From Squalus acanthias (Eukaryota), in NCBI GenBank assembly GCA_030390025.1, contig JASTWF010000070.1:1364001-1428000 (forward strand): a stretch of DNA of 64,000 bases, read 5' to 3'. The first letter of the stretch is position 1. The number at the start of each line of letters is the position of its first letter. The translations under genes and the position numbers were made by a program. The notes under the pieces were generated by a model. That model did no database searches and was not told the DNA's origin. It saw only the letters and a program-made list of their open reading frames with translations. Shown in pieces: positions 19,059 to 57,464 of this stretch.

Positions 19059-19064
19059 TTTATT
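19059..19064 (-). terminator. IgL-B polyadenylation signal AATAAA
   Basis: Paralogous to 4913-4918. Confidence 0.7.
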
Positions 19065-22700: not shown

Positions 22701-22777
22701 GGCGCCCGGGAATGAAAGCGACTGTAAATTAATAATAATTGAAACAATGTGAATGACAGAATGAGAGAGTCACTTAC

Positions 22778-23131: not shown

Positions 23132-23283
23132 CTTCAATAAAAGAAAAAAATCAACTCATTCAGAGACTTGGAGCAAATAGGAAGCTAATGCTTCAATAAA
23201 CACGGAGAGAAAACCGCCCGATTCTCGGTATTGAACCGATTTAGTTGCGGATAAACCCGTGACTAAAACCATCCGTCTCTCAC

Positions 23284-34100: not shown

Positions 34101-35479
34101 CCCAGTCTATATGTAGAGACTGGAGAAGCTGGGGTTATCCTCCTTAGAGCAGAGAAGGTTAGAGCAGATTTGATAGAGGCGTTCAAAATCATAAGGAGTC
34201 TGGACAGAGTAGATAGAGATAAACTGTTCCCATTGGCGGAAGGGTCGGCAACCAGAGGACACAGATTTAATGTGATTGGCAGAAGAACCAAAGGCGACAG
34301 GAAGAATATTTTTTTACGCAGCGAGTGGTTAGGATTTGCAATGCACTGCCTGTAAGGCTGGTGGAGGCAGATTCAATCGTGGCTTTCAAAAGGGAATTGG
34401 ATAGGTACCTGAAGGAAAAATAATTGCAGGGCTAAGGCGAAAGGGCGGCCGAGTGGGACTACCTGAGTGCTCTTGCGGAGTGCTGGCACGGGCTCAATGG
34501 GCCGAATGGCGTCCTTCTGTGTTGTAACCATTCTACGATTCCATTCCATAACAAACTGATGGAGAGGGAGCGGATGTTACAGCGCCACCTGCTGGAGAGG
34601 GAGCATATGCTCAGCTTGGGTATCTCCAGGACCACTCGGCTGCAGACATCATTACAGCCTTGTTCCAAACATGGACAAAAGAGTTGAATTCCAGAGGTGA
34701 GGGAGAGTGGCTGCCCTTGACATCAAGGCAGCATTTGGCCAAGTGTGGCATCAAGGAACCCTAGTAAAATTGAAGTCAACGGGAATCAGGGGTAAAACTC
34801 TCCACTGGCTGGAGTCATACCTTGCACAAAGAAAGATATTTGTGGTTGTCGGAGGCCAATCATCTCAGCCCCAGGACATCGCTGCAGGAGTTCCTTAGGG
34901 CAGCATCCTACCCCAAACCATCTTCAGCTGCTTCATCAATGACCTCCCCTCCATAATAAGGTCAGAAGTGAGGATGTTCGCTGATGATTGCACAGTGTTC
35001 AGTTCCATTCGCAACTCCTCCGATAATGAAGCAGTCCATGCCCGCATGCAGCAAGACCTGGACGACATTCAAGCTTGGACTGATAAGTGGCAGGTAACAT
35101 TTGCGTAACTCAAATGCCAAGCAATGACTATAATAAACAAGAGAGAGTCTACCCACCTCCCCTTGACATTCAACGGCATTGCCATCACCGAATCCCCCAC
35201 CATCAACAACCTGGGGGACACCATTGACCTGAAACTTAACTGGACCAGCCACAGAAATACTGTGACAGCAAGAGCAAGTCAGAGGCTGGGTATTCTGTGG
35301 CGAGAGCCTCACCTCCTGACTCCCCAAAAACTTTCCATCATCTACAAGGCACAAGTAAGGAGTGTGATGGAATAATCTCCACTTGCCTGGATGAGTGCAG
35401 CTCCAACAAGACTCAAGAAGCTCGACACCATCCAGGACAAAGCAGCCCGCTGGATTGGCACCCCATCCACCACCTTAAA

Positions 35480-36385
35480 TGATGATACAAAGCTAGGTGG
35501 GGCAGTAAGCTGTGAGGAGAAAACAAAGAGTCTGCAAAGGGATATAGGTAGACTAAGTGAGTGGGCAGTAGGGTGGTAGATGGAGTATAATGTAGGGAAA
35601 TGTGAAGTTATTCACATTGGTAGGAAGAATAGAATAACAGAATATTTTTAAATGGTGAGAAACTTTCAAATGTTGGTGTTCAGAGAGATTTGGGTGTCCT
35701 CGTGCAAGAAACACAGAAAGCTAGCATGCAGGTACAGCAAGCAATAAGGAAGGCAAATGGCATGTTGGCCTTTATTGCAAGGGGGTTGGAGTATAAGAGT
35801 AAGGAAGTCTTGCTACAATTGTACAGGGCCTTGGTGAGACCACACCTGGAGTATTGTGCACAGTTTTGGTCTCCTCATCTAAGGAAGGATATACTTGTCT
35901 TGGAGGTGGTGCAACGAAGGTTCACTAGATTGATTCCTGGGATGAGAGGGCTATCCTATGATGAGAGATTGAATAGATTGGGCCTATACTCTCTGGAGTT
36001 TAGAAGAATGAGAGGTGATCTTATTGAAACATACAAGATTCTGAAGGGGATTGACAGGGTAGATACTGAGAGGTTGTTTCCCCCTGGCTGGAGAGTCTAG
36101 AACTAGGGGGCACAGTCTCAGGATAAGGGGTAGGCCATTTAAGACTGAGATGAGGAAGAATTTCTTCACTCGGAGAGTTGTGAATCTTTGGAATTCTCTG
36201 CCCCAGAGGGCTGTGCATGCTGAGATAGATAGATTTTTGGACTCTATGGGAATCAAGGGACATGGGGATCAGGCGGGAAAGTGGAGTTGAGGTCGATGAT
36301 CAGCCATGATCTTATTGAATGGCGGAGTAGGCTCGAGGGGCCGTATAGCCTAGTCCTGCTCTTATTTCTTATGTTCTTATGTTCT
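35480..36385 (+). mobile_element. CR1 3' fragment nested in LINE-B of macro-unit 1
   Basis: Splits ACCACCTTAAA|CATTCACTCC; ORF 35690..36100. Confidence 0.9.
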
Positions 36386-39255
36386 TAAACATTCACTCCC
36401 TCCACCACCGGTGCACCGTGGCTGCAGTGTGCACCATCTACAAGATGCACTGCAGCAACTCACCAAGGCTTCTTCGGCAGCATCTCCCAAACCCGTGACC
36501 TCTTCCACCTAGAAGGACATGGGCAGCAGGCGCATGGGAACACCACCACCTCCAAGTTCCCCTCCAAGTCACACACCATCCTGACTTGGAAATATACCGG
36601 CCGTTCCTTCATCGTTGCTGGGTCAAAATCCTGGAACTCCCTCCCTAACAGCACTGCGGGAGCACCTTCACCACACGGATTGCAGCGGTTCTAAAAGACG
36701 GCTCACCACCACCTTCTCAAGGGCAATTAGGGATGGGCAATAAATGCCGGCATTGCCAGCAGTGCCCACATCCCAAGAATGATTTTAAAATAATGTTACC
36801 GCGCCACCTGCTGTAGAGGGAGCCGTTGCTCAGTTCGGGTTTTTGCCAGGCTTACTCGCCTCCAGACCTCATTACGGACCTGGTCCAAACATGGACAAAA
36901 GAACTGAATTCCAGAGAATGGTTACCAGGATGAGTGACTTAAGTTACGTGGATAGACTGGAGAAGCTTGGGTTGTTCTCCTTAGAGCAGAGAAAATTGAT
37001 GAGGCGATTTGATAGAGGTGTTCAAAATCATGAGGGGGTCTAGACAGAGTAGATATAGAGAAACTGTTCCCATTGGCGGAAGGGTCGAGAAACACACGAC
37101 ACAGATTTAAGGTGATTGGCAGTGGAACCGAAGACGACATGAGGAAAAACTTTTTCTGCAGTGAGTGGTTAGGATCTGGAATGCATTGCCTGAAAGGGTG
37201 GTGGAGGCAGATTCAATCGTGGCTTTCAAACGAGAATTGGATAAGTAGCTGAATGAAAAACATTTCCTGGGACTACGGGGAAAGGACTGGACAGTGGGAC
37301 TAGCTGAAGTGCTCTTGCAAAGAGCCGGCACGGGCCCGACGGGCCGAATGGCCTCCTTCTGTGCTGTATCCATTCTATGATTCCATTCTATAAGACACTG
37401 AGAGGAGTCCCACAGGAATCCTGCTAGAGATGGGCGGATGTTACAGCGCCACCTGCTGGAGAGGGAGCGGAAGTTACAGCGTCGTCTGCTGGAGAGGGAG
37501 CGGGTGTTACAGCGCCACCTGCTGCAGAGGGAGCGGATGCTCAATTCGGGTCCGACAGGACCACTCGGCTCCAGACCTCATTACAGCCTTGTTCCAAACA
37601 TGGACAAAGGTGCTGACTTCCAGAGGTGAGGTGATGATTGCACAGTGTTCAGTTCCATTTGCAACTGCTCCGATAACGAAGCAGTCCATGCCCACATGCA
37701 GCAAAACCTGGACGACATTCAGGCTTGGGCCGATAAGTGGCAAGTAATGTTCGCGCCACACAAGTGCCAGGCAATGACTATCTCCAACAAGCGAGAGTCT
37801 AACCACCACCCCTTGACATTCAACGGCATTACCATATCCGAATCCCCCACCATCAACATCCTGGGGGCTACTATTGACCAGAAACTTAACTGGACCAGCC
37901 GCATAAATATTCTGGCTACAAGAGCAGGTCAGAGGCTGGGTATTCTGCGGCAAGTGTCTCACCTCCTGAATCCCCAATTCTTTTCTACCATCTACAAGGC
38001 ACAAGTCAGGAGTGTGATGGAATACTCTCCACTTGCCTGGATGAGTGCAGCTCCAACAACACTCAAGGTGCTCGACACAATCCAAGACAAAGCAGTCCGC
38101 TTGATTGGCACCCCATCCACCACCTTAAACATTCACTCCCTCCTCCACTGGCGCACCGTGGCTGCAGTGTGTACCATCTACAAGATGCACTGCAACAACT
38201 CGCCAAGGCTTCATCGACAGCACCTCCCTAACCCACAATCTCAACCATCTAGAAGGACAAGGGCAGCAGGCGCATGGGAACATTATCACCTCCAAGTTCC
38301 CCTCCAAGTCACACACTATCCTGACTTGGAAATATATCGCCGTTCCTTCATCGTCGCTGGGACAGAATCCAGGAACTCCCTCCCTAACAGCACTATGTGA
38401 GTAGCTTCACGTCACGGACTGCGGTGGTTCAAGAAGATGGCTCACCACCACCTTCTCAAGGGCAATTAGGGATGGGCAATAAATGCTGGTCTTGCCAGCG
38501 ACGCCCACGTCCCAGGAACGAATTTTAAAAATGTTACAGCGCCACCTGCTGTACAGGGAGCGAATGTTGCAGCGCCACCTGCTGTAGATGTAGCGGATGT
38601 TACAGCGCCACCTGCTGTAGAGGGAGCTGGTGTTACAGCACCACCTGCTGTAGAGGGAGCGGATGTTGCAGCGCCACCTGCTGTAGAGGTAGCTGATGTT
38701 ACAGCGCCACCTGCTGTAGTGGAAGCGGATGCTCAGTTCAGGTTTTGCCAGGACCACTCGGCTCCAGATCTCATTACAGCCTTGGTCCAAACATGGACAA
38801 AAGAGCTGAATTCCACGGAATGGTTCCAGGGATGAGGGACTTCAGTAGGTGGATGGACAGGAGAGGCTGGGGTTGTTCTCCTTAGAGCAGAGAGGTTTGA
38901 AAGGAGATTTGATAGAGGTGTTCAAAATCATGAGGGGTCAAGACAGAGTAGAAAGAGAGAACCGGTTCCCATTGGCGGAAGGGTCGTCAACCAGAGGACA
39001 CAGATTTAAGGTGATTGGCAGAAGAACCAAATGCGACAGGAGGAATAACTTTTTTACGCAACCAGTGGTTAGGATCTGGAATGCGCTGCCTGAAAGGGTG
39101 GTGGAGGCACACTCAATCGTGTCTTTCAAAAGGGAATTGGATAAATACCGGAAGGGAAAACATTTGATGGGGTACAGGGAAAGGGCAGGGAACTGGGACT
39201 AGCTGAGGTGCTCTTGCAGAGAGCCGGCACAGACTCGACGGATCGAATGGGCTCA

Positions 39256-42200
39256 TAGAGTCATATACTCATAGAGTGATACAGCACAGAAAGAGGCCCT
39301 TCGGCCCATCGTGTCCACGCCGGCCATCAAGCCCTGTCTATTCTAATCCCATTTTCCAGCACTTGGTCCGTAGCCTTGTATGCTATGGCGTTTCAAGTGC
39401 TCATCTAAATGCTTCTTGAATGTTGTGAGGGTTCCTGCCTCTACCACCCATTCAGGCAGTGAGTTCCAGATTCCAACCACCCTCTGGGTGAAAATGTTTT
39501 TCCTCAAATCCGCTCTAAACCTCCTGCCCCTTACCTTGAAACTATGCCCCCTGGTTATTGACCCCTCTACTAAGGGGGAAAGTTCCTTTCTATCTACCCT
39601 AACTATGCCCCTCATAATTTTGTACACCCCAATCAGGTCCCCCCTCAGCCTTCTCGGCTCCAAGGAAAACAACCCCAGCCTGTCCAGTCTCTCCTCATAG
39701 CTGATGCACTCCAGCCCAGGTAACATCCTGGTGAATCTCCTCTGCACCCTCTCCAATGCAATCACATCCTTCCTATAGTGTGGCGACCAGAACTGCACAC
39801 AGTATTCCAGCTGTGGCCTAACTAGCGTTTTGTACAGTTCCATCATAACCTCCCAGCTCTTATATTCTATGCCTCGGCTAATGAAGGCAAGTATCCCATA
39901 TGCCTTTTTAACCACCTTATCTACCTGTCCTGCTGCCTTCAGGGATCTATGTACATGCACACCAAGGTCCCTCTGATCCTCTGTCCTACCATTCATTGTA
40001 TATTCCCTTGCCTTGTTAGTCCTCCCAAAATGCATCACCTCACACTTTTCAGGGTTAAATTCCATTTGCCACTGTTCTGCCCATCTAACCAACCCGTCTA
40101 TATCGTCCTGTAGCCTGAGGCTTCCCTCCTCGCTATTTACCACTCCACCAATTTTCGTTTCATCTGCGAACTTACTGATCATACCTTCTACATTCATATC
40201 TAAATCATTAATATACAATACAAGCAGCAAAGGACCCAGCACCGATCCCTTCCTGCCACTAAGCCAATTTTTGATCCAATGTGCCAAATTGCCCTGGAAC
40301 CCATGGGCTCTTACCTTCTTGACCAGTCTCCCATGCGGGACTTTGTCAAAAGCCTTACTGAAGTCCATATAGACTGCAGCAACTGCACTACCCTCATCCA
40401 CACACCTAGTCACCCCCTCGAAAAATCCAATCAATTTGGTTAGACATGATCTCCCCCTAACAAAGCCATGCTGACTATCCTTGATTAATCCTTGCCTCTC
40501 CAAGTGGAGACTAATTCTGTCCCTCAGAATTTTTTCCAATAATTTCCCTACCACTGATGTTAGGCTCACTGGCCTATAATTCCCTGGTTTATCCCTACTA
40601 CCCTTCTTGAATAATGGTACTACGTTAGCTATTCTCCAGTCCTCTGGCACCTCCCCTGTGGCCAGAGAGGTTCTGAAAATTTGTGTCAGAGCCCCTGCAA
40701 TCTCCTCCCTTGCCTCACACAGCAGCCTGGGATACACCTCGTCTGGGCCTGGGGATGTATCCACTTTTAAGCCCACTAAAACCGCTAGTACCTCCTCCCT
40801 CTCAATGCTAATTTGTTCAAGTATATCACAATCCCCCTGCCTGATTTCTATGCCTACATCGTCCTTCTCCATTGTGAACACAGATGCAAAATATTCATTT
40901 AAAACCTCACCTACATCTTTCGGCTCTACACACAGATTGCCACTTGGGTCCCTAATAGGACCTACTCTTTTCCTGGTTATCCTCTTGTCCTTAATATACT
41001 TATAAAACACCTTGGGATTTTCCTTTATTTTGCACGCCAGTGTTTTTTCATGCCCCCTCTTCGCTCTCCTAATTTCTTTTTTAAATACCCCCCTGCACTT
41101 TCTATACTCCTCTACGGCTTCCACTGTTTTTAGTCCTTTGTATCTGCCAAAAGCCTCCCTTTTTTTGCTAATCCATTCTTGTATATCCCTTGACATCCAG
41201 GGTTCCCTGGACTTGTTGGTCCCACCTTTGACCTTTACAGGAACATGTTGGCGCTGTACTCTCTCTATTTCCTTTCTGAATGACTTCCACTGCTCTGATG
41301 TGGATTTTCCTACAAGTAGCTGATCCCAGTCTACTTTGGCCAGATCCTGCCTTATCATATTAAAATCGGCCTTCCCCCAATTTAGAACCTTTATTTCTGG
41401 TCCATCTTTATCCTTTTCCATGACTACCTTAAATCTGACCGAATAACTTCACTGTCACTGTCACCAAAATGCTCTCCTATTGCCACTTCTATCATTTGCC
41501 CGGCTACATTCCCTAGAATTAGGTCCAGTACCGCCCCCTCTCTTGTAGGACTTTCTACATGCTAGCTCAAAAAGCTCTCCTGAATGCACTTTAAGAATTC
41601 TGCACCCTCTAAGCCTTCCACACTCTGACTATCCCAGTTAATATTGGGGGAAGTTGAAATCCCCTACTATTATTACCCTATTATTTCTACACTTCTCTGA
41701 GATTTGCCTACATATCTGTTCCTCTATCTCCCCCTGACTGTTTGGGGGCCTATAGTACACTCCCAGCAAAGTGCTTGCCCCCTTTTTGTTTTTAAGTTCT
41801 ACCCATATGCCCTCATTAGAGGCACCTGCTAAGATATCATCCCTCCTTACAGCAGTAATTGACTCCTTGATTAATATTGCCAGGCCCCCTCCTCTTTTAC
41901 ACCCCCCTGTGTCTCGCCTGAAGATTCTATACCCTGGAATATTGAGCTGCCCGTCCTACCCCTCCCTCCACCATGTCTCTGTGATAGCAACAATATCAGA
42001 CTCCCATGTGTTCATCAACACCTTCAATTCATCTGCCTTACTCGCAAGACTCCTTGCATTAAAATAAATGCCATCCAGCCTTGCCATACTCCCTTGTGCC
42101 GTTACATATTTCCTCTGCCTGGCTTGTTTTTTCCTCTATATTTGGCTGTGCATTACCCCCTACTATAGCTCCCATCCCCCTGCCAAGTTAGTTTAACCCC

Positions 42201-42490
42201 CCCCCCCCCAACAGCACTAGCAAACCTCCCCGCAAGGATGTTGGTCCCGTTCCGGTTCAGGTGCAACCCGTCCGACTTGTACAGGTCCCACCTTCCCCAG
42301 AAGCAGACCCAGTGATCCAGGAAACTAAAGCCCTCCCTCCTGCACCAACTCTTTAGCCACGCATTCATCTGCTCTATCCTCCTATTCCTATACTCACTAG
42401 CACGTGGCACCGGGAGTAATCCAGAGATTACAACCTTTGAGGTCCTGCTTTTTAATCTGCTACCTAGCTCCCTAAATTCTCCCTAGCTCC
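39256..42490 (-). mobile_element. Long CR1 LINE: end of ORF1 (SGNH-esterase-like), endonuclease and RT with internal deletions
   Basis: 42153..42410 LDHW..FWGRWDLYKSDGLHLN (DxxH esterase motif); 692-aa ORF 39343..41421 lacking the segment between WLSGR and GSVLGP. Confidence 0.92.
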
Positions 42491-42824
42491 TCCTGAGCTG
42501 TAACCATTCCTTAATTCCATTCTATAACACACTGAGAAGTATCCCACAGGAATCCTGCTGGAGAGGGAGCTGATCTTACAGCGCCACCTGCTGGAGAGGG
42601 CGCGAATGTTACAGCGCCACCTGCTGGACAGGGAGCACATGCTCAGTTCGTGTTCCACCAGGACCCCACTGGGCTCCCGACATGGACAAATGAGCTGAAT
42701 TCCAGAGGTGAGGTGAGAGTGACTGCCCTTGACATCAAGGCAGCATTCGGCCAAGTGTGGCATCAAGGAGCCCTAGTAAAACTGAAGTCAATGGGAATCA
42801 GGGGGGAAACTCTCCACTGGCTGG

Positions 42825-44269
42825 TGGAAGATTTCAAAAAGTGTAATAAAACCGCGTGTAGATCGAAATTGCGAACGATTTGTAAGATGATAACGGACGG
42901 ATTCAAAATGTAGGAAATCGGCCTGTGTTCTTTGTTTGTCACATGGACAAGAAGGAAGAACTTGATTGACAAGGAAGTCCCGCCCCCATACATCTCACAG
43001 GAACAGGAACGTGACATGCGGAAGGAACTCCAATCAGGGAAGGTTTGGAGTGGAACTGACCTATCTAAGGGAGGCAGAGAGTTCTTTATGATCAACGAGG
43101 CCTTATAACCCAGTGGCGGGAGCTTTCAGAGAACAAAGAAGAAGCCCAGAAGACAGAACAGGAGAAACAATGGACTGAGAAAGCTGGCCAGTCTCTGTTT
43201 CGAATTACAATTTTCCCTGGACCGATCACCCAGAGACAATGTACGAGACTCGGATATATAGACATAGACATAGACATAGAAGATAGGAGCAGGAGTAGGC
43301 CATTCGGCCCCTCGAGCCTGCTCCGGCATTCGATGAGATCATGGCTGATCATCCAAACTCAGTACCCTGTCCCTGCCTTCTCCCCATATCCCTTGATACC
43401 TTTAGCTTTAAGAAATATATCTAACTCATTCTTGAATATATTTAATGACTTCGCCTCAACTGCCTTCTGTGGTAGAGAATTCCACAGGTTCACCACTCTC
43501 TGGGTGAAGAAATTCTTCCTCATTTCTGTCCTAAATGGCTTACCCCTTATCCTTAGATTATGACCCCTGGTTCTGGACTCTCCGACCATCGGGAACATTC
43601 TTCCTGCATCCAGTTTGTCCAGACCTGTCAGAATTTTATATGTTTCGATGAGAGCCCCTCTCATTCTGCTATACTCCAGCGAGTATAAGCCCAATCGACC
43701 CAATCTCTCCTCATATGTCATTCCTGCCATCCCAGGTATCAGCCTTGTGAATCTTCGCTGAACTCCTTCCATGACAAGAACATCCTTCCTCAGATAAGGC
43801 GACCAAAACTGCACACAGTACTCAAGGTGTGGTCTCACCAAGGCCCTGTACAACTGCAGCAGGACATCCCTGTTCCTATACTCAAACCCTTTCGCTATGA
43901 AGGCCAACATACCATTTGCCTTCTTCACCGCCTGCTGCACCTGCATGCTTACCTTCAGCGACTGGTGCACAAGGACACCCAGGTCTCGTTGCACTTCCCC
44001 TTCTCCCAATCTATAAGCTTAGATGTTGTTAAGGGGGTACTTTTATGTACGTTTGAATCATTAAAGGGGCACTTTTATATACTTTGAATTGATAAGTTGC
44101 AGGCATATTTATTGCCGGGAGTTCTTTGAATTTGTTGCCAAAGGTGCTTTTATGTACACTTGAATTTTGAACTACAGTCTGATTAAAAGACCAATTTTAT
44201 TGATCACATCCTTGTCTGTCATTCTTAAGCTAATTCGTAATTCTCGAGGTAGTAAGAGAAAGTCTTACA
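42825..44269 (+). mobile_element. Solo LTR (about 690 bp net) with CTGG TSD, interrupted by a CR1 fragment
   Basis: TGGAAGATTT...AAAGTCTTACA termini; CTGG at 42821-42824 and 44270-44273; host LINE-B resumes; ATTAAA near 44182. Confidence 0.8.
43257..44013 (-). mobile_element. Young CR1 3' fragment, nearly identical to about 30360-31100
   Basis: ORF 43359..44009 almost matches the C-terminal part of 30447..32036. Confidence 0.92.
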
Positions 44270-47213: not shown

Positions 47214-48446
47214 TGTAGGCTTCGCAAAATCCCCCAGAAACTCGAACAGAGCCCTAAAGGGAGTGATTTTTGGACTTTTCATACAAACTTGGGATGATGG
47301 GGCCTAAGTGAAGTGATTTGATGTAAAAACCTAAAGATCAGAGAAGAAAAAACCTGAGGAAACTGACTTTTTGAATCTTACTGTTGGGAGAGACACCTTT
47401 CACAGACACAAGCTGCGAGGGGCGTGGCCAGGCAGTGAACAAATCAAGCTGTCTGGGAATTGTTTACACTACAAATCCTACCAAGGTGCAAGAGACAAAG
47501 TAAAAACTCACAAACACATTCAAATATGAATCCCCAGGGGCAAACAAGATGCTGGAAATCTAAAAACGATTCCTGACAATAAAACTTCCAGCACACAGTT
47601 TCACAGCCATTATCCCATCAAAAAAACTAATCAACCAGGTATCCACAGAACAGATTTAAAAGCCTGCCGAAAGACCTAGGACATTAGGGGGAGATTTGGC
47701 GTGTAGATAAGGCTGTGTTTAAATCGGGAAACGATCAAGACATGTTTAACACTGAGCAAAAGCCATCGGAACTGGCAAGCCCGCCAAAACTAGACAATTG
47801 GACTAAGCAAGGTTCATTTGCAACCAAAAGGAATCCGTTTTAGTAAGGGTTTTTTGGGCGCGAAAAAGAAACAGTATAATTTGAAAGCCTGTGCCATAAT
47901 TTCTCTCTCTTTCGGACTGGCTGACCACGCGGACACAGCTCTCTCCCTGCTCCAGCAAAACCTACCACAAGCTACGAGGAAGAAGGCCAGAAAACAGACC
48001 AGCATGCAAGAAGAAACCAGAGCGACTGCCTCAGTGACCATCGGACACCTTGCAGCAACAAGGGCCTTACGGAGTCTTTTAAACAAAAGACTCTAAAATC
48101 CTGTCAAGGATTCGTTGGTGAGCATTATCCCTGATCTCCTGAAACCAAAAACCTAGCCAGATAGTGGGATCTTTGGGAGGGATAAGGTTTTGTTTGATAT
48201 ATTGTCATTTCCCTCGCTTGTACCGTGTGCTCCCCAATCTGTGTTTAAGTAATAAGTGTGTTTCAAGTTTGTTACCTTTTTCTTTTAATAAAGTAAAATT
48301 CTTTCATCAGAACCTGTCATTTACTGCAATTTTGTTCACAACCCCTAAATAAGTCCAAAGTCTAGGAACCGGAGGGGTGTGGGAGCGATTCGAACCGCTC
48401 ACTGTGTCAGAAAGCGAAGGCTGACCCCATTAAGATACCCCTTACA
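47214..48446 (+). mobile_element. Solo LTR, 1233 bp, GGGC TSD (ERV1-like or Gypsy)
   Basis: TGTAGG...CCTTACA termini; GGGC at 47210-47213 and 48447-48450; AATAAA 48287-48292; host LINE-B resumes. Confidence 0.85.
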
Positions 48447-51400
48447 GGGCCAATCCTTCATCGTCGCTGGGTCAAAATCCTGGAACTCCCTCCCTAACAG
48501 CACTGTGGGAGCACCTTCACCACACGGACTGCAGCGGTTCAAGAAGGCAGCTCACCGCCACCTTCTCGAGGGCAATTAGGGATGTGCAATAAATGCTGGC
48601 CTTGCCGGCGATGCCCACATCCCAGGGACGAATAAATAAAATGTTACAGCGCCACCTGCTGTAGAGGGGGCCGTTGCTCAGTTCGGCTTTTGCCAGGATC
48701 ACTCGCCTCCAGACCTCATTAGGGCTTTGGTCCAAACATGGACAAAAGAACTGAATTTCAGAGAATGGTTCCCGGGATGAGGGACTTCAGTTACGTGGCT
48801 AGACTGGAGAAGTTCGGGTTGTTCTCCTTAGAGCAGAGAAGATTGAGAGGAGATTTGATAGAGATGTTCAAAATCATGAAGCGTCTGGACAGAGTAGATA
48901 GAGAGAAACTGTTCCCATTGGCGGATGGGGCGAGAACCAGAGGACACAGATTTAAGGTGATACCCAGAAGAACCAAAGGTGACATGAAGAAAAACTTTTT
49001 TTTAAGTGGCAATTGGTTAGGATCTTGAATACACTGCCTGAAAGGATGTTGGAGGCAGACTCAATCGTGGCTTTCAAAAGGGAGTTGGATAAGTACCTGA
49101 AGGAAAAACATTGGCTGGGTTACGGGGAAAGGCTGGGGGAGTGGGACTAGCTGAGGTGCTCCTGCAGAGAGCCGGCACGGGCTTGACGGGCCGAATGGCC
49201 TCCTTCTGTGCTGTTACCATTCTATGATTCCATTCTGTAACACACTGAGAGGAGTCCCACAGGAATCCTGCTGGAGAGGGAGCGGATGTTACAGCGCCAC
49301 CTGCAGGAGAGAGAGTGGATGTTTCAGCGCCACCTGCTGGAGAGGGAGCGTATGCTCAGTTCGGGTTTCGCCAGGACCACTCGGCTCCAAACCTCATTAC
49401 AGCCTTGTTCCAAACATGACAAAGGAGCTGAATTCCAGAGGTGAGGTGAGAGTGACTGCCCTTGACATCAAGGCAGCATTTAGCTAAGTGTGGCATCAAG
49501 GAGCCCTAGTAAAATTGAAGTCAATGGGAATCAGGGGGGAAACTCTCCACTGGCTGGAGACATACTGAGCACAAAGGAAGAAAGTTGTGGCTGTTGGAGG
49601 CCAATCATCTCAGCCCCAGGACATCGCTGCAGGAGTTCCTCAGGGCAGTGTCCTAGGCCCAACCATCTTCATCTGCTTCATCAATGACCTCCCCTCCATC
49701 ATAAGGTCAGAAGTGGGGATGTTCGCTGGTGATTGCACAGTGTTCAGTTCCATATTGCAACACCTCCAACAATGAAGCAGTCCATGCTCGCATGCAGCAA
49801 GACCTGGACGACATTCAGGCTTGGGCTGATAAGTGGCAAGTAACATCCGCGCCACACAAGTGCCAGGCAATGATTATCTCAAACAAGCGAGAGTCGAACC
49901 ACTGCCCCTTGACATTCAACAGCTTTCCGATCACCAAACCCCCATCATCAATATCCTGGGAGTCACCATTGAGCAGAAACTTAACTGGACCAGCCACATA
50001 AATACTGTGGCTACAAGAGCAGGTCAGAGGCTGGGTGTTCTGCATCGAGTGTCTCACCTCCTGACTCCCCGAAGCATTTCTGCCATCTACAAGGCACAAG
50101 TCAGGATTGTGATGGAATACTCTCCACTTGCCTGGATAAGTGCAGCTCCAACAACACTCAGAAGCTCAATACCATCCAGGACAAAGCAGCCCGCTTAATT
50201 GGCACCCCATCCACCACCTTAAACATTCACTCCCTCCACCACCGGCGCACCGTGGCTGCAGTGTGTACCATCTTCAAGATGCACTGCAGCGACTCGCCAA
50301 GGCTTCTTCGGCAGCACCTCCCAAACCCGTGACCTCTTCCACCTAGAAGGACAAGGGCATCAGGCGCATGGGAACACCACCACCTCCAAGATCCCCTCCG
50401 AGTCACTCACGCACCATCCTGACTTGGGAACATATCGACCGTTCCTTCATCGTCGCTGGGTCAAAATCCTGGAACTCCCTCCCTAACAGCACTGTGGGAG
50501 GACCTTCACCACACGGACTGCAGCGGTTCAAGAAGGCGGCTCACCACCACCTTCTCAAGGGCAATTAACAATGCGCAATAAATTCTGACCTTGCCAGCGA
50601 CACCCACATCCCAGGAACAAATAAAAAATTGTTACAGCGCCACCTGCTGTAGAGGGAGTCATAGAGTCATAATGTTATACAGCACAGAAAGAGGGCCTTC
50701 TGCCCACCGTGTCCGCGCCGGCCATCAAGCCCTGTCTATTCTAATCCCATTTTCCAGCACTTGGTCCGTAGCTTTGTATGCTATGGCATTTCAAGTGCTC
50801 AACTAAATGCTTCTTGAATGTTGTGAGAGTTCCTGCCTCTACCACCCTTTCAGGCAGTGAGTTCCAGATTCCAACCACCCTCTGGGTGAAAAAGATTTTC
50901 CTCAAATCCCCTCTAAACCTCCTGCTCCTTACCTTGAAACTATGCCCCCTGGTTATTGACCGCTCTACCAAGGGGAAAAGTTCCTTTCTATCTACCCTAT
51001 CTATGCCCCTCATAATTTTGTACACCTCAATCAGGTCCCCCTCAGCCTTCTCTGCTCTAAGGAAAACAACCCCAGCCTGTCCAGTCTCTCTTCATAGCTG
51101 AAGCGCTGCAGCCCAGGTAACATCCTGGTGAATCTCCTCTGCACCCTCTCCAACGCAATCACATCCTTCCTATAGTGTGGCGACCAGAACTGCACACAGT
51201 ATTCCAGCTATGGCCTAACTAGCGTTTTGTACAGCTCCATCATAACCTCCCTGCTCTTATATTCTATGCCTCGGCTAATGAAGGCAAATATCCCATATGC
51301 CTTTTTAACCACGTTATCTACCTGTCCTGCTGCTTTCAGGGATCTATGTACATGCGCACCAAGGTCCCTCTGATCCTCTGTCCTTCCTAGGGTCCTACCA

Positions 51401-52132
51401 TTCATTGTGTATTCCCTTGCCTTGTTAGTCCTCCCAAAATGCATCACCTCACACTTTTTAGGGTTAAATTCCATTTGCCACTGTTCTGCCCATCTAAGCA
51501 ACCCGTCTATATCGTCCTGTAGCCTAAGGCTTCCCTCCTCGTTATTTACCACTCCACCAATTTTCGTGTCATCTGCGAACTTACTGATCATACCTCCTAC
51601 ATTCATATTTAAATCATCAATGTACACTACAAACAGCAAAGGACCCAGCACCGATCCCTGTGGTACAACACTAGACACAGTCTTCCAGTCACAAAAACAA
51701 CTTTCGACCATCACCCTCTGCCTCCTGCCACTAAGCCAATTTTGGATCCAATGTGCCAAATTGCCCTGGATCCCATGGGCTCTTACCCTCTTGACCAGTC
51801 TCCCCTGCGGGACTTTGTCAAAAGCCTTACTGAAGTCCATGTAGACTACATCAACTGCACTACCCTCATCCACATACCTAGTCACCCCCTCGAAAAATTC
51901 AATCAAATTGGTTAGACATGATCTCCCCCTGACAAAGCCATGCTGACTATCCTTGATTAATCCTTGCCTCTCCAAGTGGAGACTAATTCTGTCCCTCAGA
52001 ATTTTTTCCAATAATTTCCCTACCACTGATGTTAGGCTCACTGGTCTGTAATTCCCTGGTTTATCCCTACTACCCTTCTTGAATAATGGTACTACGTTAG
52101 CTGTTCACCAGTCCTCTGGCACCTCCCCTTTG

Positions 52133-52242
52133 TATCTAATTATCTTCACCTGAGGAAGGAGCAAATCGATAGCTCCGAAAGCTTGTGATTTCAAATAAAA
52201 CTGTTGGACTATAACCTGGTGTTGTGCGACCTCTCAATTTTG
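52133..52242 (+). mobile_element. 110-bp Penelope-type terminal-repeat fragment with 12-bp TSD
   Basis: ACCTCCCCTTTG at 52121-52132 and 52243-52254; empty site seen in the sister CR1 near 40650. Confidence 0.75.
52146..52188 (+). ncRNA. Minimal type I hammerhead ribozyme motif
   Basis: TCAC-CTGAGGA-A-GGAGC(loop)GCTCC-GAAA-GCTT-GTGA: CUGANGA/GAAA core, stems I and II, palindromic minimal stem III. Confidence 0.7.
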
Positions 52243-52954
52243 ACCTCCCCTTTGGCCAGAGAGGTTCTGAAAATTTGTGTCAGAGCCCCTGCAATCTCCT
52301 CCCTTGCCTCACACAGCAGCCTGGGATACATCTCGTCTGGGCCTGGGGATTTATCCACTTTTAAGCCCGCTAAAACCGCTTGTACCTCCTCCCTCTCAAT
52401 ACTAATTTGTTCAAGTATATCACAATCCCCCTGCCTGATTTCTATGCCTACATCGTCCTTCTCCATAGTGAACACAGATGCAAAATATTCATTTAAAACC
52501 TCACCTACATCTTCCGGCTCTACACACAGATTGCCACTTTGGTCCCTAATGGGCCCTACTCTTTCCCTGGTTATCCTCTTGCCCTTAATATACTTATAAA
52601 ACACCTTGGGATTTTCCTTTATTTTGCCCGCCAGTGTTTTTTCATGCCCCTCTTCGCTCTCCTAATTTATTTTTTAAGTATCCCTCTGCACTTTCTATAC
52701 TCCTCCACGGCTTCCATAGTTTTTAGTCCTTTGTATCTGCCAAAAGCCTCCCTTTTTTTCCTAATCCATTCTTGTATATCCCTTGACATCCAGGGTTCCC
52801 TGGGCTTGTTGGTCCCACCCTTGACCTTTATGGGAACATGTTGGTGTTGTACTCTCTCTATTTCCTTTCTGAAAGACTCCCACTGCTCTGATCTGGATTT
52901 TCCTACAAGTAGCTGATCCCAGTTCACTTTGGCCAGATCCTGCCTTATCATATT

Positions 52955-53698
52955 GGGCCAAAAATTCATCCCGCGACGCGAGAGTACGCACTGCGTACTC
53001 TCGCGTATTCTCTCTCCAATTGCCGGTTTTCTGCATGCCCTGCACATGCGCTGAAAACCGGCACTTGGTCTTTTGAAAAGGGGGCGGTTCCTCGGTGCAT
53101 CGCATGCGCGCTACAGGCTGCGCGCACGCTGTGCACTTCATGCTTTGGATGCGCAGGTAAGTACGGAAGATTTTAGAAATGGAAAAAGGAGGAGTAAGAC
53201 CCACTTTTAACAAGGTAAGTAGTGAATTAAGTATTTTTTTGATTTTTTTTTAACAGGTATATCTTTTTTAGAGACTTTAAAGACAGGTAAGTTTATTTTT
53301 ATAACTTTTTAAAAGATTTTAAATTTTTTCAAAAATTTAATTTTTTATTTAAAATGGTTAATTTATTTAACTATACTTATTTTATTAATGTGATGGGTTT
53401 TTTTTTAAATTTAATTGAGGTTTAGCTGTTATTTTGGGGGGGTGTAAGATTCATAGATTTCACAGCACGGACATGAAACTTATGAATGGAAGATGGTGTG
53501 CTGCCATTGGCTCTAACTGAGTCACGTGATCCCACAGCTCGCACGAATTCACTACGCCGGTGGGATACGCAAGCACTGCCCAGCTGATGTCTGGAACATC
53601 AAGTTCGTGCGAGCTGGATCTGAAAAAGCACAAGCGGAGTGAGAGATCGCGGGGATGCCTTACCCCCGCGGGAACAGAGCGAGATCAATTTCTGGGCC
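52955..53698. mobile_element. MITE, second copy of the 9737-10478 family, ATT TSD
   Basis: TIR 16/20 match; ATT at 52952-52954 and 53699-53701; empty site TTATCAT-ATT-AAAATCGGC at about 41352-41370. Confidence 0.92.
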
Positions 53699-56391
53699 AT
53701 TATAATCGGCCTTCCCCCAATTTAGAACCTTTATTTCTGGTCCATCTTTATCCTTTTCCATGACTACCTTAAATCTCACCGAATTGTGGTCACGGTCACC
53801 AAAATGTTCTCCTACTGACACTTCTATCACTTGCCCGGCTACATTCCCTAGAATTAGGTCCAGTACCGCCCCCTCTCTTGTAGGACTTTCTACATGCTGG
53901 CTCAAAAAGCTCTCCTGGATGCACTTTAAGAATTCCGCACCCTCTAAGCCTTTCACACTCTGACTATCCCAGTTAATATTGGGGAAGTTGAAATCCCCTA
54001 CTATTATTACCCTATTATTTCTACACTTCTCTGAGATTTGCCTACATATCTATTCCTCTATCTCCCCCTGACTGTTTCGGGGCCTATAGTACACTCCCAG
54101 CAAAGTGCTTGCCCCCTTTTTGTTTTTAAGTTCTACCCATATGCCCTCATTAGAGGAACCTGCTAAGATATCATCCCTCCTTACAGCAGTAATTGACTCC
54201 TTGATTAATATTGCGACACCCCCTCCTCTTTTACTCCCCCCTCTGTCTCGCCTGAAGATTCTATACCTAGCTGCCAGTCCTGCCCCTCCCTCAACCATGT
54301 CTCTGTGATAGCAACAATATCATACTCCCATGTGTTCATCAACACCTTCAATTCATCTGCCTTACTCGCAAGACTCCTTGCATTAAAATAAATGCCATCC
54401 AGCCTTGCCATACTCCCTTGTGCCATTACATATTAGCTCTGCCTTCCAGGCTGACTTGTTTTTTCCTCTATATTTGGCTGTGCATCACCCCCTACTATAG
54501 CTCTACTCCGTATCCCATCCCCCTGCCAAGTTAGTTTAACACCCCCACCCCCTACAGTACTAGCAAGTGGATGCTCAGATCGAGTTTTGCCAGGATTACT
54601 CGGTTCCAGACCTCATTACAGCCTTGGTCCAAACATCGACAAAAGAACTGAATTCCAGAGGGGTTCAAAATCATGAGGGGTCTAGAGAAGTAGATAGAGA
54701 GAAACTGTTCCCATTGGCGGAAGGGTCGAAAACCAGAGGACACAGATTTAAGGTGATTGGCAGCAATTCCAAAGGCGACATGAGGGACAACTTTTTACGC
54801 AGCGATTGCTTAGAATCTGGAATGCACTGCCTGAAAGGGTGGTGGAGGCAGATACAATCACGGCTTTCAAAAGGGAATTGGATAGGTACCAGAAGGAAAA
54901 AAAATTGAATGGCTACAGGGAAAGAGCGGGGGAGTGGGACTAGCTGAAGTGCTTTTGCAGAGAGTCAGCTTGGGCTCGACGGGCCGAATGGGCTCCTTCT
55001 GTGCTGTAACCATTCTATGATTCCATTCTATAACACACTGAGAGGAGTCCCTCAGGAATCCTGCTGGAGAGGGAGCGGATGTTAGAGCGCCACCTGCTGG
55101 AGAGGGAGAGAATGTTACAGCGCCACCTGCTGGAGAGGTAGCAGATGCTCAGTTCAGGTTCCGCCAAGACCACTCGGCTCCAGACCTCATTACAGCCTTG
55201 TTCCAAACATGGACAAAAGAACTGAATTCCAGAGGTGAGGTGAGAGTGGCTGCCCTTGACATCAAGGCAGCATTTGACCGAGTGTGGCATCAAGGAGCCC
55301 TAGTAAAACTGAAGTCAATGGGAATCAGGGGGAAAACTCTCCACTGGCTGGAGTCATACCTAGCACAAAGGAAGAAAGTTGTGGTGGTTGGAGGTCAATC
55401 ATCTCAGCCCAGGACATCGCTGCAGCTGTTTCTCAGGGCAGTGTCCTAGGCCCAAACATCTTCAGCTGATTCATTAATGAACTCCCCTCCATCATATGCT
55501 CAGAAGTGGGGATGTTTGCTGATGATTGCACAGTGTTCAGCGCCATTCACAACTCCTCAGAGAATGAAGCAGTCCATGCTCGCATGCAGCAAGACCTGGA
55601 CGACATTCAGGCTTGGGCTGAAAAGTGGCAGGTAGCATTAGCGCCACACAAGTGGCAGGTAATGACAATCTCCAACAAGCGAGTGTCAAACCACCGCTCC
55701 TTGACATTCAGTGGCATTACCATCACCGAATCCCCCCACCATCAACATCCTGGGGGTCACCATAGACCAGAGACTGGACCAGCCACATAAATACTGTGGC
55801 TACAAGAGCAGGTCAGAGGCTGGGTATTCTGCGCTGAGTGTCTCACCTCCTGACTCCCCAAAGCCTCTCCACCATCTACAAGGCACAAGTCAGGAGTGTG
55901 ATGGAATACTCCCCACTTGCCTGGATGAGTGCAGCTCCAACAATACTCAACAAGCTCAAGGAAAAACTTTATTATGCAGTGAGTGGTGAGGACCTGGAAC
56001 TCGCAGCCGACGGAAGTGGTGGAAGCGGAGACACTCAATGTTTTCAAGGGGAGACTGGATAGGCACTTGAGGGAAATAAACTTGCAGGGCTACGGGGATA
56101 GAGTGGGGGAATGGGACTGACCGGATTGCTCTACAGAGAGCCGGCACGGACCCGATGGGCCGAATGGCCTCCTTCTGTGCCGTTATGACTCTATGACTCT
56201 ATGACCAGCAAGTACAAAGCAGCCCGTTTGATTGGCACCCCATCTACCACCTTAAACTCTCTCCCTAACAGCACTATGGGAGTAACTTCAGCTCATGGAC
56301 TGCAGCGGTTCAAGACGATGGCTCTCTACCACCTTCTCAAGGGCAATTAGGGATGGGCAATAAATGTTGGCCTTGCCAGCGATGCCCAGGA

Positions 56392-57250
56392 ACATAGAAA
56401 CATAGAAAAATAGGAGCAGGAGTGGGTCATTCGGCCCTTCGAGCCTGCTCCACCATTCAATATGATCATGGTTGATCCTCTATCTCAATACCATATTCCC
56501 GCTCTCTCCCCATACCCCTTGATGCCTTTTGTGTCTAGAAATCTATCTCCTTCTTAAATATATTCAGTGACTTGGCCTCCACAGCCTTCTGTGGTAGAGA
56601 ATTCCACAGGTTCACCACCCTCTGAGTGAAGAAATTTCTCCTCATCTCAGTCCTAAATGTCCTGCCCCGTATCCTGAGACTGTGACCCCTCGTTCTAGAC
56701 CCCCGGCCCCCCCCAGCCAGGGAAGCATCCTCCCTGCATCCAGTCTGTCTAGCCCTGTCAGAATTTTATACGTTTCAATGAGATTCTCTCTCATTCTTCT
56801 AAACTCTAGTGAATACAGGCCTAGTCGACCCAATCTCTCCTCATATGACAGTCCTGCCATCCCAGGAATCAGTCTGGTGAACCTTCGCTGCACTCCCTCT
56901 ATGGCAAGTATATCCTTTCTTAAGTAAGGAGACCAAAACTGCACACAGTACTCCAGGTGTGGTCTCACCAAGGCCTTGTACAACTGTAGTAAGACATCCT
57001 TGCTCCTGTACTCAAATCCCCTTGCAATGAAGGCCAACACACCATTTTCCTTCCTAACTGCTTGCTGCACCTGCATGTTTGCTTTCAGTGACTGGTGTAC
57101 AAGGACACCCAGGTCCCTTTGTACATCAACATTTCCCAATCTATCACCATTTAAGTAATACTCTGCCTTTCTGTTTTTCCTACCGAAGTGGATAACTTCA
57201 CATTTACCCACGTTATACTGCATCTGCCATGTATTTGCCCACTTGCTCGA
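56392..57250 (-). mobile_element. CR1 3' fragment inserted in the LINE-B tail of macro-unit 6
   Basis: ORF 56642..57349 (WANTWQMQYNV...). Confidence 0.9.
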
Positions 57251-57464
57251 CAATGAAAGAAATTTTACAGCGCCACCTGCTGGAGAGGGAGCGGGTGTTA
57301 CAGCGCCACCTGCTGGAGAGGGGGCGGCTGTGCAGTTGCTTCGCTCCAAAGGGTGTCACCAGAGAACAGATTCCAGGAGGAGCCCCGATCACACGCCTTA
57401 AAGGGGCCGTTTCCTTAACACGGTATTAATTGGGATCTTCACCCTCCTGTGGATGCCCAGCCCC

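What the first reader, a model, noticed from the sequence alone, without database searches (positions are those of the whole stretch)
34580..57316. Array of about 27 co-oriented CTCF motifs facing the Ig light-chain clusters: candidate shark 'super-anchor' or insulator
Seen: a 33-bp unit TGTTACAGCGCCACCTGCTG(G/T)AGAGGGAGCGGA occurs in 12 mini-arrays (manual count 1,1,3,6,2,2,4,1,2,1,2,2), starting at 34580, 36799, 37444, 38537, 42579, 45333, 46008, 48647, 49292, 50635, 55085 and 57268, always on the same strand. The GCGCCACCTGC core looks better preserved than the rest of the unit. Known: CCAGCAGGTGGCGCTG is essentially the vertebrate CTCF consensus. Reverse-strand motifs anchor loops extending toward lower coordinates. 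The mouse IgH locus is bounded by a cluster of co-oriented CTCF elements. Inference: this 23-kb block is a strong directional boundary 11-34 kb upstream of the two IgL clusters, built by local amplification. It could help regulate clustered shark Ig genes autonomously. I saw no convincing convergent partner site inside the window. The core also contains the E2A/ZEB E-box CAGGTG.
Basis: partly seen in the sequence, partly recalled or inferred. Interest (0 to 1): 0.88.

Follow-up and report, generated by a model that had tools for sequence, protein, structure and literature searches.

The report
Co-oriented CTCF-motif repeat block beside IgL genes
Next to two shark antibody light-chain genes lies a 23-kb locally amplified repeat that carries 27 same-direction copies of the DNA word recognised by the chromatin-looping protein CTCF, and that word has been kept unusually intact, so it is a good but untested candidate for a chromatin boundary.

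Summary
The core fits the published CTCF consensus: 12 units fit perfectly and 13 have one mismatch. No other such site lies anywhere in the 64 kb.

The block, 34117-57328, is a macrosatellite of six ~2-kb macro-units. Each is built from two 5'-truncated LINE fragments, with a mini-array at each junction. Six later TE insertions interrupt it.

Contigs from four public runs show that the LINE parts are dispersed in huge numbers. Dispersed copies stop at the array edge, and at most 5 variant-carrying contigs are listed per array place. So the unit is not TE-borne genome-wide.

The motif columns differ from consensus at 2.5% of cells, against 6.8% in the flanking macro-unit DNA and 8.2% in the rest of the unit. 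The motif's CpG survives in 26 of 27 units, against 16 of 27 for the unit's other CpG.

Two germline-joined IgL genes lie 11-29 kb away, on the side the motifs face.

CTCF binding and boundary function are inferred, not shown. The closest known kind is the DXZ4-type tandem-repeat CTCF array, or the Igh 3' CTCF cluster. Other first readers of this scan noted CTCF-like arrays elsewhere in this genome; those notes are unchecked.

The parts
34117..57328 (.). Whole block: a macrosatellite of six ~2-kb macro-units (A-array-B-array), interrupted by six later TE insertions
   Evidence: Self-BLAST maps. Pairwise divergence between macro-units is 8-17%.
34575..34607 (-). Mini-array 1 (1 unit, after A1). 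The CTCF-type motif reads on the - strand.
36794..36826 (-). Mini-array 2 (1 unit, after B1, T-type at column 21)
37439..37537 (-). Mini-array 3 (3 units). The middle unit, 37472, has a decayed core.
38532..38729 (-). Mini-array 4 (6 units, all T-type)
42574..42639 (-). Mini-array 5 (2 units)
45328..45393 (-). Mini-array 6 (2 units)
46003..46134 (-). Mini-array 7 (4 units). At most 5 variant-carrying contigs are listed per place here in each of 4 runs.
48642..48674 (-). Mini-array 8 (1 unit)
49287..49352 (-). Mini-array 9 (2 units)
50630..50662 (-). Mini-array 10 (1 unit). Its last few bases are replaced by the LINE insertion that starts at 50656; the core is intact.
55080..55145 (-). Mini-array 11 (2 units)
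57263..57328 (-). Mini-array 12 (2 units) at the right edge of the block, followed by non-LINE sequence
48675..49286 (+). Reference copy of segment A. It holds 90 bp of reverse-transcriptase coding sequence shared with B, then ~500 bp of the 3' end of a second LINE family ending in short ATTCTRTG-like repeats, then a decayed partial unit.
   Evidence: Sequence. 74% match to the 3' part of the LINE at 50656-51659. Loose ends at 45481 and 49230.
49353..50629 (+). Reference copy of segment B: a 5'-truncated LINE holding the reverse-transcriptase 3' half plus the 3' UTR
   Evidence: The equivalent copy 46002-46550 matches RVT_1 at 3.7e-18 from profile position 41. Loose ends at 45327 and 48624.
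35480..36383 (.). Later LINE-fragment insertion inside B1
39258..42486 (-). Later insertion splitting the third A copy. It includes a LINE with an open 692-aa reading frame at 39343-41421.
   Evidence: RVT_1 1.3e-27
42825..44269 (.). Later insertion inside the third B copy (LINE fragment at 43262-44014)
47211..48448 (.). Later insertion inside B5. Contigs that skip it exist. The element is found in the organism A runs, with almost no coverage in organisms B and G.
   Evidence: joint 47209-48449; depth table
50656..54566 (-). Later LINE insertion directly behind mini-array 10. It is 92-96% identical to 39258-42223.
55959..57243 (.). Later LINE-fragment insertion(s) between B7 and mini-array 12
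22773..23150 (-). Germline-joined VJ exon of the nearer IgL gene; its C exon is at 19378-19734 (-)
   Evidence: It belongs to the 93-94% duplicate of the cluster tested.
8117..8494 (-). Germline-joined VJ exon of the farther IgL gene; its C exon is at 5232-5588 (-)
   Evidence: V-set 1.6e-11, C1-set 1.3e-19

Best explanation
Structure (shown). The block 34117-57328 is a locally amplified macrosatellite. Its ancestral ~2-kb unit was a patchwork of two 5'-truncated LINE fragments, A and B. Each fragment was preceded by a short 33-bp minisatellite. The unit was duplicated in tandem to six copies, and six TE insertions followed. The arrays are older than the amplification: a diagnostic base at column 21 is T in the first unit of every array that directly follows an intact B end and G in the arrays after A. 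Array 12, which follows a TE insertion behind the truncated B7, is G-type. Each 33-bp unit carries a canonical vertebrate CTCF core on the minus strand.

Constraint (shown as a statistical pattern). That core, including its CpG, has been kept while the rest of the unit and the surrounding macro-unit drifted at the local background rate.

Function (inferred). CTCF binds these sites, at least in the germline and probably in lymphoid cells. Twelve closely spaced groups of sites then act together as a multi-site, one-directional barrier that stalls cohesin extruding from the lower-coordinate side. That side holds the two IgL genes and, by unchecked notes, a larger IgL array. The barrier would insulate that domain from what lies beyond.

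Because these IgL genes are germline-joined, the role would be insulation of transcription or enhancer action rather than RAG scanning.
For: - Count, strand and chance: 27 units, all on one strand; 26 core hits against 0.03 expected.
- Fit to the consensus CCASYAGRKGGCRS: 12 of 27 units fit perfectly, 13 have one mismatch and 2 have two. No other site with up to 1 mismatch exists in 64 kb on either strand (1.01 expected).
- The 14-base core is identical to a mouse site picked for high CTCF occupancy.
- Constraint: core columns 6-20 have 10 mismatches in 405 cells (2.5%). Flanking A/B DNA has 688 in 10144 (6.8%; Fisher 2e-4). Unit columns 22-30 have 20 in 243 (8.2%), not different from the flank (p=0.37). 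Only 2.0% of CpG-containing 15-column flank windows are as conserved as the core.
- CpG: the core CpG is kept in 26 of 27 units, the unit's other CpG in 16 of 27, and flank CpGs in 209 of 312 cells.
- The perfect 13-mer is kept in the first unit of 10 of 12 arrays, including all 4 single-unit arrays.
- Not a dispersed TE part: hundreds of contigs per run leave the reference exactly at the LINE ends next to the arrays (loose ends at 45327, 48624, 49230).
- Units are also seen in runs of two other coded organisms.
- IgL genes lie on the side the motifs face.
- Loop-extrusion signatures are reported for a cartilaginous fish, the little skate (passage in bioRxiv 10.64898/2026.10.19.759930).
Against: - There are no binding, methylation or contact data of any kind.
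- The cells counted are not independent, because the units share ancestry. The tree-respecting empirical test is modest: 2.0% of CpG-containing windows, but 9.7% of all flank windows, are as conserved as the core. With one unit per array, core against columns 22-30 gives only p=0.06.
- No convergent partner lies in the window, and no CTCF-like site lies within the IgL clusters themselves.
- Six TE insertions were tolerated in the block, so spacing is not constrained.
- Units 33 bp apart are probably too close to all be occupied together (recalled footprint size).
- Ten units (the T-type ones) have A instead of C at motif position 1.
- Read laying itself warns that contig depth is not copy number, so a handful of further loci with this unit cannot be excluded.
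- Whether IgL clusters continue beyond the window's high end is unknown.
Confidence: 0.5

Rival explanations
1. A neutral macrosatellite with an accidental CTCF-like word. A minisatellite that happened to resemble the CTCF motif was copied passively when the LINE patchwork duplicated. The better-kept core then reflects minisatellite turnover (gene conversion, or preferential propagation of units with a recombination-prone core) or chance, not protein binding.
For: - The block is made of TE debris and tolerates TE insertions.
- Array sizes vary from 1 to 6, as in unstable minisatellites.
- 9.7% of all 15-column flank windows are as conserved as the core.
- One unit per array gives only p=0.06.
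- A conserved core inside variable units is a classic minisatellite trait (recalled, not tested).
Against: - Homogenisation should act on the whole 33 bp. Yet columns 22-30 diverge at the flank rate, 8.2% against 6.8%.
- All four single-unit arrays, where no intra-array turnover is possible, keep the perfect 13-mer.
- The hypermutable CpG in the core is kept in 26 of 27 units, against 16 of 27 for the other CpG of the same unit.
- The conserved stretch spans about 20 bp and coincides with a full CTCF-type motif.
Confidence: 0.27
2. The sites are functional, but the reader is another factor, for example an E-box protein (E2A, ZEB or Snail type) on CACCTG, or another zinc-finger protein. The block would then be a lymphoid enhancer or silencer cluster rather than a loop anchor.
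For: The core contains CACCTG/CAGGTG, and the neighbours are Ig genes. E2A sites in Ig enhancers are established knowledge (recalled).
Against: - Conservation covers columns 8-20 and 1-4, far more than a 6-bp E-box.
- The only column changed in three units is column 13, inside the E-box. It breaks CACCTG but leaves a one-mismatch CTCF fit.
- E-box function does not predict strict co-orientation.
Confidence: 0.1
3. The unit is part of a transposable element (a promoter or tail repeat of a LINE or composite retroposon), so the motifs are scattered genome-wide and their nearness to IgL genes is accidental.
For: Every array abuts LINE-derived sequence, and the 90 bp after each array is reverse-transcriptase coding sequence. 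TE-borne CTCF sites are well known in mammals (recalled).
Against: - In all four runs, dispersed copies of both LINE families end at the array borders and continue into unrelated sequence: 376-743 contigs at 45327 (three runs), 321-585 at 48624 (three runs) and 577-647 at 49230 (two runs).
- Dispersed A copies continue upstream into LINE sequence instead of the 90-bp piece (loose end at 45481).
- Array places list 0-5 variant-carrying contigs, against up to the 128 cap on LINE places.
- Other B 3' ends in the window (61922-62379, 24344-24552) are not followed by the unit.
Confidence: 0.05

Closest known systems
DXZ4 / ICCE / FIRRE-type tandem-repeat CTCF arrays of the mammalian X chromosome (also the human 1q23.3 tRNA VNTR boundary)
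   Same: A kb-scale unit is repeated in tandem, each unit carries a CTCF motif, and the motifs are co-oriented. The surrounding repeat sequence diverges quickly while the CTCF motif is kept. [quoted passage not shown]
   Different: The shark block has only six macro-units, and they are old (8-17% diverged), built from LINE fragments and riddled with TE insertions. The motif itself sits in a nested 33-bp minisatellite (1-6 copies, two arrays per macro-unit). The block is autosomal or unknown in location and lies next to Ig genes. No binding has been shown. My conservation test compares paralogous units within one locus, not orthologues between species.
Mouse Igh 3' CTCF-binding elements (3'CBEs, hs5-7 'super-anchor') and other clustered CTCF boundaries
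   Same: A dense cluster of CTCF sites sits at one side of an antigen-receptor locus and is oriented toward it. The mouse region is described as a potential insulator and 'end' of the locus (abstract of PMC3499808). An architectural stripe from the 3'CBE cluster and clustered-CTCF boundaries are known to me from listings only.
   Different: The mouse sites are about ten unique, dispersed elements, not a repeat. They lie downstream of the constant genes of a rearranging translocon locus. The shark block lies upstream of the V of non-rearranging, germline-joined cluster genes. Its position at a locus end is not established, and no convergent partner was seen.
TE-borne CTCF sites spread by retrotransposition (SINE B2 type; recalled, not looked up)
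   Same: The motifs are embedded in TE-derived DNA and multiplied by a copying process.
   Different: Here the copying was local tandem duplication. The motif is not part of the dispersed LINE families.

Membership tests
Vertebrate CTCF binding site | Sequence fits the core consensus CCASYAGRKGGCRS | tested here: met
   12 of 27 units fit with 0 mismatches, 13 with 1 and 2 with 2. The consensus is as quoted in PMC6746451. The 14-mer is identical to a high-occupancy mouse site.
Vertebrate CTCF binding site | Occupied by CTCF in vivo | not testable with these tools
   No ChIP or CUT&Tag data are reachable. The runs found were DNA contigs only.
Vertebrate CTCF binding site | Motif CpG unmethylated where bound | tested here: inconclusive
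   Only an evolutionary proxy is available. The core CpG is kept in 26 of 27 units, against 16 of 27 for the second CpG and 209 of 312 for flank CpGs. This is consistent with germline hypomethylation or with selection; it is not a methylation measurement.
Clustered CTCF boundary / antigen-receptor-locus super-anchor (Igh 3'CBE type) | Several co-oriented CTCF sites within a few tens of kb | tested here: met
   25 consensus-grade sites in 12 groups over 22.8 kb, all on the - strand.
Clustered CTCF boundary / antigen-receptor-locus super-anchor (Igh 3'CBE type) | Lies at the edge of the locus, with motifs pointing into it | tested here: inconclusive
   IgL genes lie at 5.2-23.2 kb on the side the motifs face. 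In my six-frame motif screen nothing Ig-like turned up beyond the block up to 64000. Eight unchecked notes place further IgL clusters only at lower coordinates (8 of 128 notes shown). DNA beyond the window could not be read.
Clustered CTCF boundary / antigen-receptor-locus super-anchor (Igh 3'CBE type) | Convergent partner sites inside the domain | tested here: not met
   No + strand site with up to 1 mismatch in the window, and no site at all with up to 2 mismatches in 1-34000. A partner could lie outside the window.
Clustered CTCF boundary / antigen-receptor-locus super-anchor (Igh 3'CBE type) | Insulation, or a stripe or loop anchor, in contact maps | not testable with these tools
   No Hi-C data are available.
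Tandem-repeat CTCF array (DXZ4 type) | kb-scale unit in head-to-tail tandem copies, each with a CTCF motif | tested here: met
   Six A-array-B-array macro-units of ~2 kb, each with two arrays.
Tandem-repeat CTCF array (DXZ4 type) | Conservation concentrated on the CTCF motif | tested here: met
   2.5% against 6.8% (flank) and 8.2% (rest of unit), measured among paralogous copies. A between-species test was not possible.
Dispersed TE-borne CTCF motif | The motif belongs to the consensus of a dispersed TE family | tested here: not met
   Dispersed LINE copies end at the array borders, and array places list at most 5 variant-carrying contigs per run.

The most novel reading that the evidence does not exclude
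The block is a selection-maintained CTCF 'super-anchor' that closes one end of a shark IgL cluster array more than 1 Mb long. On this reading, loop-extrusion boundaries were already part of antigen-receptor locus design in cartilaginous fish, even for germline-joined cluster genes that need no RAG scanning. Such an anchor could be built de novo by nesting a 33-bp CTCF minisatellite inside a LINE-fragment macrosatellite. Together with the unchecked notes of CTCF arrays at TCR V segments in the same genome, this would point to a genome-wide habit of making CTCF anchors by tandem repetition at immune loci.
Probability: 0.22. Interest if true: 0.72.

Novelty: new member of a known kind. Interest (0 to 1): 0.5.

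Why it matters
How cartilaginous fish regulate their many small Ig clusters is poorly understood. That includes which clusters are expressed and how neighbouring clusters and interspersed non-Ig genes are kept apart. Two full-text searches brought up no shark-Ig/CTCF paper among the 27 listed of 1,808 matching papers. If bound, this block would be a concrete, strongly predicted CTCF boundary next to Ig genes in an early-branching jawed vertebrate. One ChIP or CUT&Tag experiment and one Hi-C map would test it. It would also be a clear case of a CTCF site cluster made by tandem amplification outside mammals. If not bound, it is a useful warning that perfect, co-oriented motif arrays can arise and persist in repeat DNA.

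Tried and rejected
- TE-borne motif: rejected on the contig evidence and because other B-type LINE 3' ends in the window lack the unit.
- Structured RNA or tRNA-derived SINE: none found. Rfam at gathering threshold gave 0 matches and ARAGORN gave 0 genes.
- Common origin with the 33-bp satellite at 62907-63498: only a shared 9-mer, with shuffle p=0.04. Not accepted.
- Coding origin of the unit: the array is not in frame with the reverse-transcriptase sequence that follows it. The ORFs across arrays are repeat artefacts.
- Search for the same unit in other windows of this genome by sequence: blank. Word searches gave only unchecked first-reader notes.
- A first literature search for a 15-letter consensus string found nothing. 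A second found the 14-letter form in print.
- I did not identify the species, because run names are coded. I ran no further search on it.
- No JASPAR matrix or FIMO was available, so motif quality rests on the IUPAC consensus and one validated mouse site.
- Supplementary files of papers were not opened. They might hold CTCF matrices or shark or skate boundary lists that bear on this.
- Papers and what I saw of each: PMC6746451, one figure-legend passage. bioRxiv 10.1101/407031, one methods passage. bioRxiv 10.64898/2026.10.19.759930, passages. PMC3491370 and PMC3499808, abstracts and outlines. All others, search listings only.
- Recalled, not taken from any call: the assignment 'motif on the minus strand faces lower coordinates', the CTCF footprint size, the minisatellite-core idea, SINE B2, and the label 'CR1-like' for segment A.
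Full report
**1. Observation**

The 13-base core with up to one mismatch occurs 26 times in the window. All hits are on the + strand and lie between 34582 and 57315. Shuffles give 0.03 expected. A whole-unit scan on both strands, tolerating up to 9 substitutions, returns 27 full units (0-5 mismatches) and one half-decayed unit at 34542.

Tandem Repeats Finder independently reports the 33-bp period for the arrays of two or more units. The window contains no N.

**2. Anatomy**

Self-comparison, the sequence of a clean stretch and ORFs show that 34117-57328 is a tandem macro-repeat. One macro-unit reads as follows:
- a mini-array;
- 90 bp of reverse-transcriptase coding sequence;
- segment A, about 500 bp, the 3' end of one LINE family, ending in short ATTCTRTG-like repeats;
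- a second mini-array;
- the same 90 bp, continuing into segment B, about 1.3 kb: the reverse-transcriptase 3' half and 3' UTR of a second LINE family.

B matches Pfam RVT_1 (3.7e-18) only from profile position 41, so it is 5'-truncated. A is 74% identical to the 3' part of the LINE at 50656-51659. The label 'CR1-like' for A is recalled.

There are six macro-units. They differ pairwise by 8-17%. Six later insertions interrupt them: 35480-36383, 39258-42486, 42825-44269, 47211-48448, 50656-54566 and 55959-57243. None destroys a core. The insertion at 50656 replaces only the last bases of the unit at 50630.

Column 21 of the unit is T in the first unit of every array that directly follows an intact B 3' end, and G in the arrays after A (one unit has C). 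Array 12 at 57263 follows a TE insertion behind the truncated B7 and is G-type. So both arrays existed in the ancestral macro-unit and were copied with it. Array lengths changed afterwards.

The two IgL clusters are 93-94% identical. Their duplication is therefore younger than the amplification of the block.

**3. Is the unit a part of the transposons?**

I laid Logan contigs of four runs on 45200-50700 at 85% likeness. Two runs are from coded organism A and one each from organisms B and G.

The bin holding the four-unit array collects 1.3-2.1x10^3. The array places listed among the differences show 0-5 variant-carrying contigs. The tool warns that contig depth is not copy number, so I lean on where contigs lie:
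- 743, 535 and 376 contigs (X1, X3, X6) run off into mutually unlike sequence exactly at 45327, the B 3' end before an array.
- 321-585 contigs do so at 48624.
- 577-647 contigs do so at 49230, the A 3' end.
- 190 contigs (X1) continue upstream of 45481 into LINE sequence rather than into the 90-bp piece.

So the dispersed LINE families do not carry the unit, and the A/B/array junctions are specific to this locus or to very few loci. Two other B 3' ends inside the window (61922-62379, 24344-24552) also lack the unit. A few contigs of organisms B and G cover units, so the unit also occurs in two other coded organisms. Orthology could not be assessed. The insertion 47211-48448 is covered in the two organism A runs and almost uncovered in the other two.

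**4. Is it a CTCF motif?**

The reverse complement of the unit contains CCAGCAGGTGGCGC. A figure legend in PMC6746451 quotes the human genome-wide consensus as CCASYAGRKGGCRS. The methods of bioRxiv 10.1101/407031 list a mouse site containing the same 14 bases, chosen for high CTCF occupancy.

Scanning the window with the consensus at up to 1 mismatch gives 25 hits. All are in the units and all are on the - strand; 1.01 are expected. Twelve hits are perfect. At up to 2 mismatches all 27 units are hit, 8 further weak hits lie at or beyond 34249, and none lies in 1-34000. So there is no convergent partner in the window and no CTCF-like site inside the IgL clusters.

**5. Constraint**

| Stretch | Mismatches to consensus / cells | Rate |
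|---|---|---|
| Unit columns 6-20 (core) | 10 / 405 | 2.5% |
| Unit columns 1-20 | 17 / 540 | 3.1% |
| Unit columns 22-30 | 20 / 243 | 8.2% |
| Aligned A and B flanks, substitutions only | 688 / 10144 | 6.8% |

I left out column 21 (subfamily marker), columns 31-33 (array-end junctions) and the 134-bp fragment A4.

- Core against flank gives Fisher p=2e-4. Columns 22-30 against flank gives p=0.37.
- The cells share ancestry, so I also used the flanks as an empirical null. Of all 15-column flank windows, 9.7% are as conserved as the core; of those containing a CpG, 2.0% are.
- With one unit per array the contrast shrinks: 4/180 against 8/108, p=0.06.
- The perfect 13-mer survives in 21 of 27 units and in the first unit of 10 of 12 arrays, including all four single-unit arrays. 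Flank 13-mers survive in 42% of copies, and CpG-containing flank 13-mers in 30%.
- The core CpG is intact in 26 of 27 units. The unit's other CpG is intact in 16 of 27 (11 of 15 if array-end units are dropped). Flank CpGs are intact in 209 of 312 cells; that set is biased upward because I required at least 2 copies with CG.
- Unit 37472 shows that single units in multi-unit arrays can decay.

Together this points to a real but moderately supported constraint on a stretch of about 20 bp that coincides with the CTCF motif. It is wider than the CACCTG E-box. The one column hit three times (column 13) breaks the E-box but leaves a one-mismatch CTCF fit.

**6. Context**

Germline-joined VJ exons lie at 8117-8494 and 22773-23150, and C exons at 5232-5588 and 19378-19734. 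All are on the - strand. Pfam confirms V-set (1.6e-11) and C1-set (1.3e-19) for the first pair.

The block starts 11.4 kb upstream of the nearer V. By the convergent rule, minus-strand motifs face lower coordinates, that is, the IgL genes. The strand assignment is recalled; the principle appears. Loop-extrusion signatures are reported for the little skate.

Eight unchecked first-reader notes, of 128 that fit the query, place more IgL clusters 23 kb to 1.13 Mb before the window and none after it. I could not read beyond the window. Beyond the block, 57.3-64 kb matches LINE fragments and other in-window repeats plus a 33-bp satellite.

**7. Mechanism and rivals**

The most likely reading (0.5) is a cluster of CTCF sites acting as a one-directional cohesin barrier beside the IgL genes.
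- Shown: the structure, the motif fit, co-orientation, local origin and relative conservation.
- Inferred: binding, barrier function and the target domain.

The rivals are:
- a neutral minisatellite-in-macrosatellite whose core conservation comes from repeat turnover or chance (0.27);
- another DNA-binding reader, such as an E-box factor (0.1);
- a TE-borne dispersed motif (0.05), largely excluded.

**8. Comparison and novelty**

The closest known kinds are the DXZ4-type tandem-repeat CTCF arrays, for which conservation across mammals is restricted to the CTCF motif (abstract), and the CTCF-dense region downstream of the Igh 3' regulatory region (abstract). This block shares tandem, co-oriented, motif-focused conservation with the first and a position beside an antigen-receptor locus with the second.

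It differs in four ways: the nested 33-bp minisatellite, the LINE-fragment origin, the old and TE-riddled state, and the position upstream of non-rearranging cluster genes. Two full-text searches brought up no shark-Ig/CTCF paper among those listed: 15 of 1,636 papers and 12 of 172.

I file it as a new member of a known kind, with membership in 'bound CTCF boundary' untested. Other first readers of this scan noted CTCF-like arrays at TCR V segments elsewhere in this genome. Those notes are unchecked and were not used as support.

**9. Verdict**

Interest is 0.5: a well-defined, cheaply testable candidate boundary at a shark Ig locus, but of a known class and without functional data.

Noticed in passing
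window 62907-63498: A second 33-bp tandem repeat with 17.9 copies and 91% matches. It shares only the 9-mer GAGGGAGCG with the CTCF-type unit (shuffle p=0.04) and has no CTCF-consensus hit. A 166-aa repeat-artefact ORF lies on the - strand.
   Followed up: partly
window 39343-41421 (-): An uninterrupted 692-aa reading frame with a reverse-transcriptase domain (RVT_1 1.3e-27) in a LINE inserted into the block. A 92-96% identical copy lies at 50656-54566, itself interrupted by an extra ~0.7-kb insert (52950-53669, which matches 9732-10449). This suggests a young, possibly active LINE family.
   Followed up: partly
window 47211-48448: A 1.24-kb insertion in one B copy. It is covered by many contigs in both organism A runs and almost none in the runs of organisms B and G. 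This suggests a lineage-specific mid-repetitive element of unknown type.
   Followed up: partly
window 1-34000: No match to the CTCF consensus with up to 2 mismatches on either strand in the 34 kb holding both IgL clusters. About 7 would be expected pro rata from the shuffles (14 per 64 kb).
   Followed up: partly
window 6-9064 and 14130-23720: The two IgL clusters are a 93-94% identical duplication with a period of about 14.1 kb. That makes the duplication younger than the 8-17% diverged macro-units of the block, which were not included in it.
   Followed up: partly
window 49246-49286 and equivalent A ends (e.g. 34542-34574): Each array after segment A is preceded by a decayed partial unit that has lost the CTCF core. 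It may be a relic of the unit's origin, or of an older unit that escaped constraint.
   Followed up: no
window 59700-60230: Another first-reader note calls this a B-cell enhancer-like island just outside the block. If real, the CTCF block would lie between it and the IgL genes, and so would block that enhancer from them rather than serve it. Not examined.
   Followed up: no
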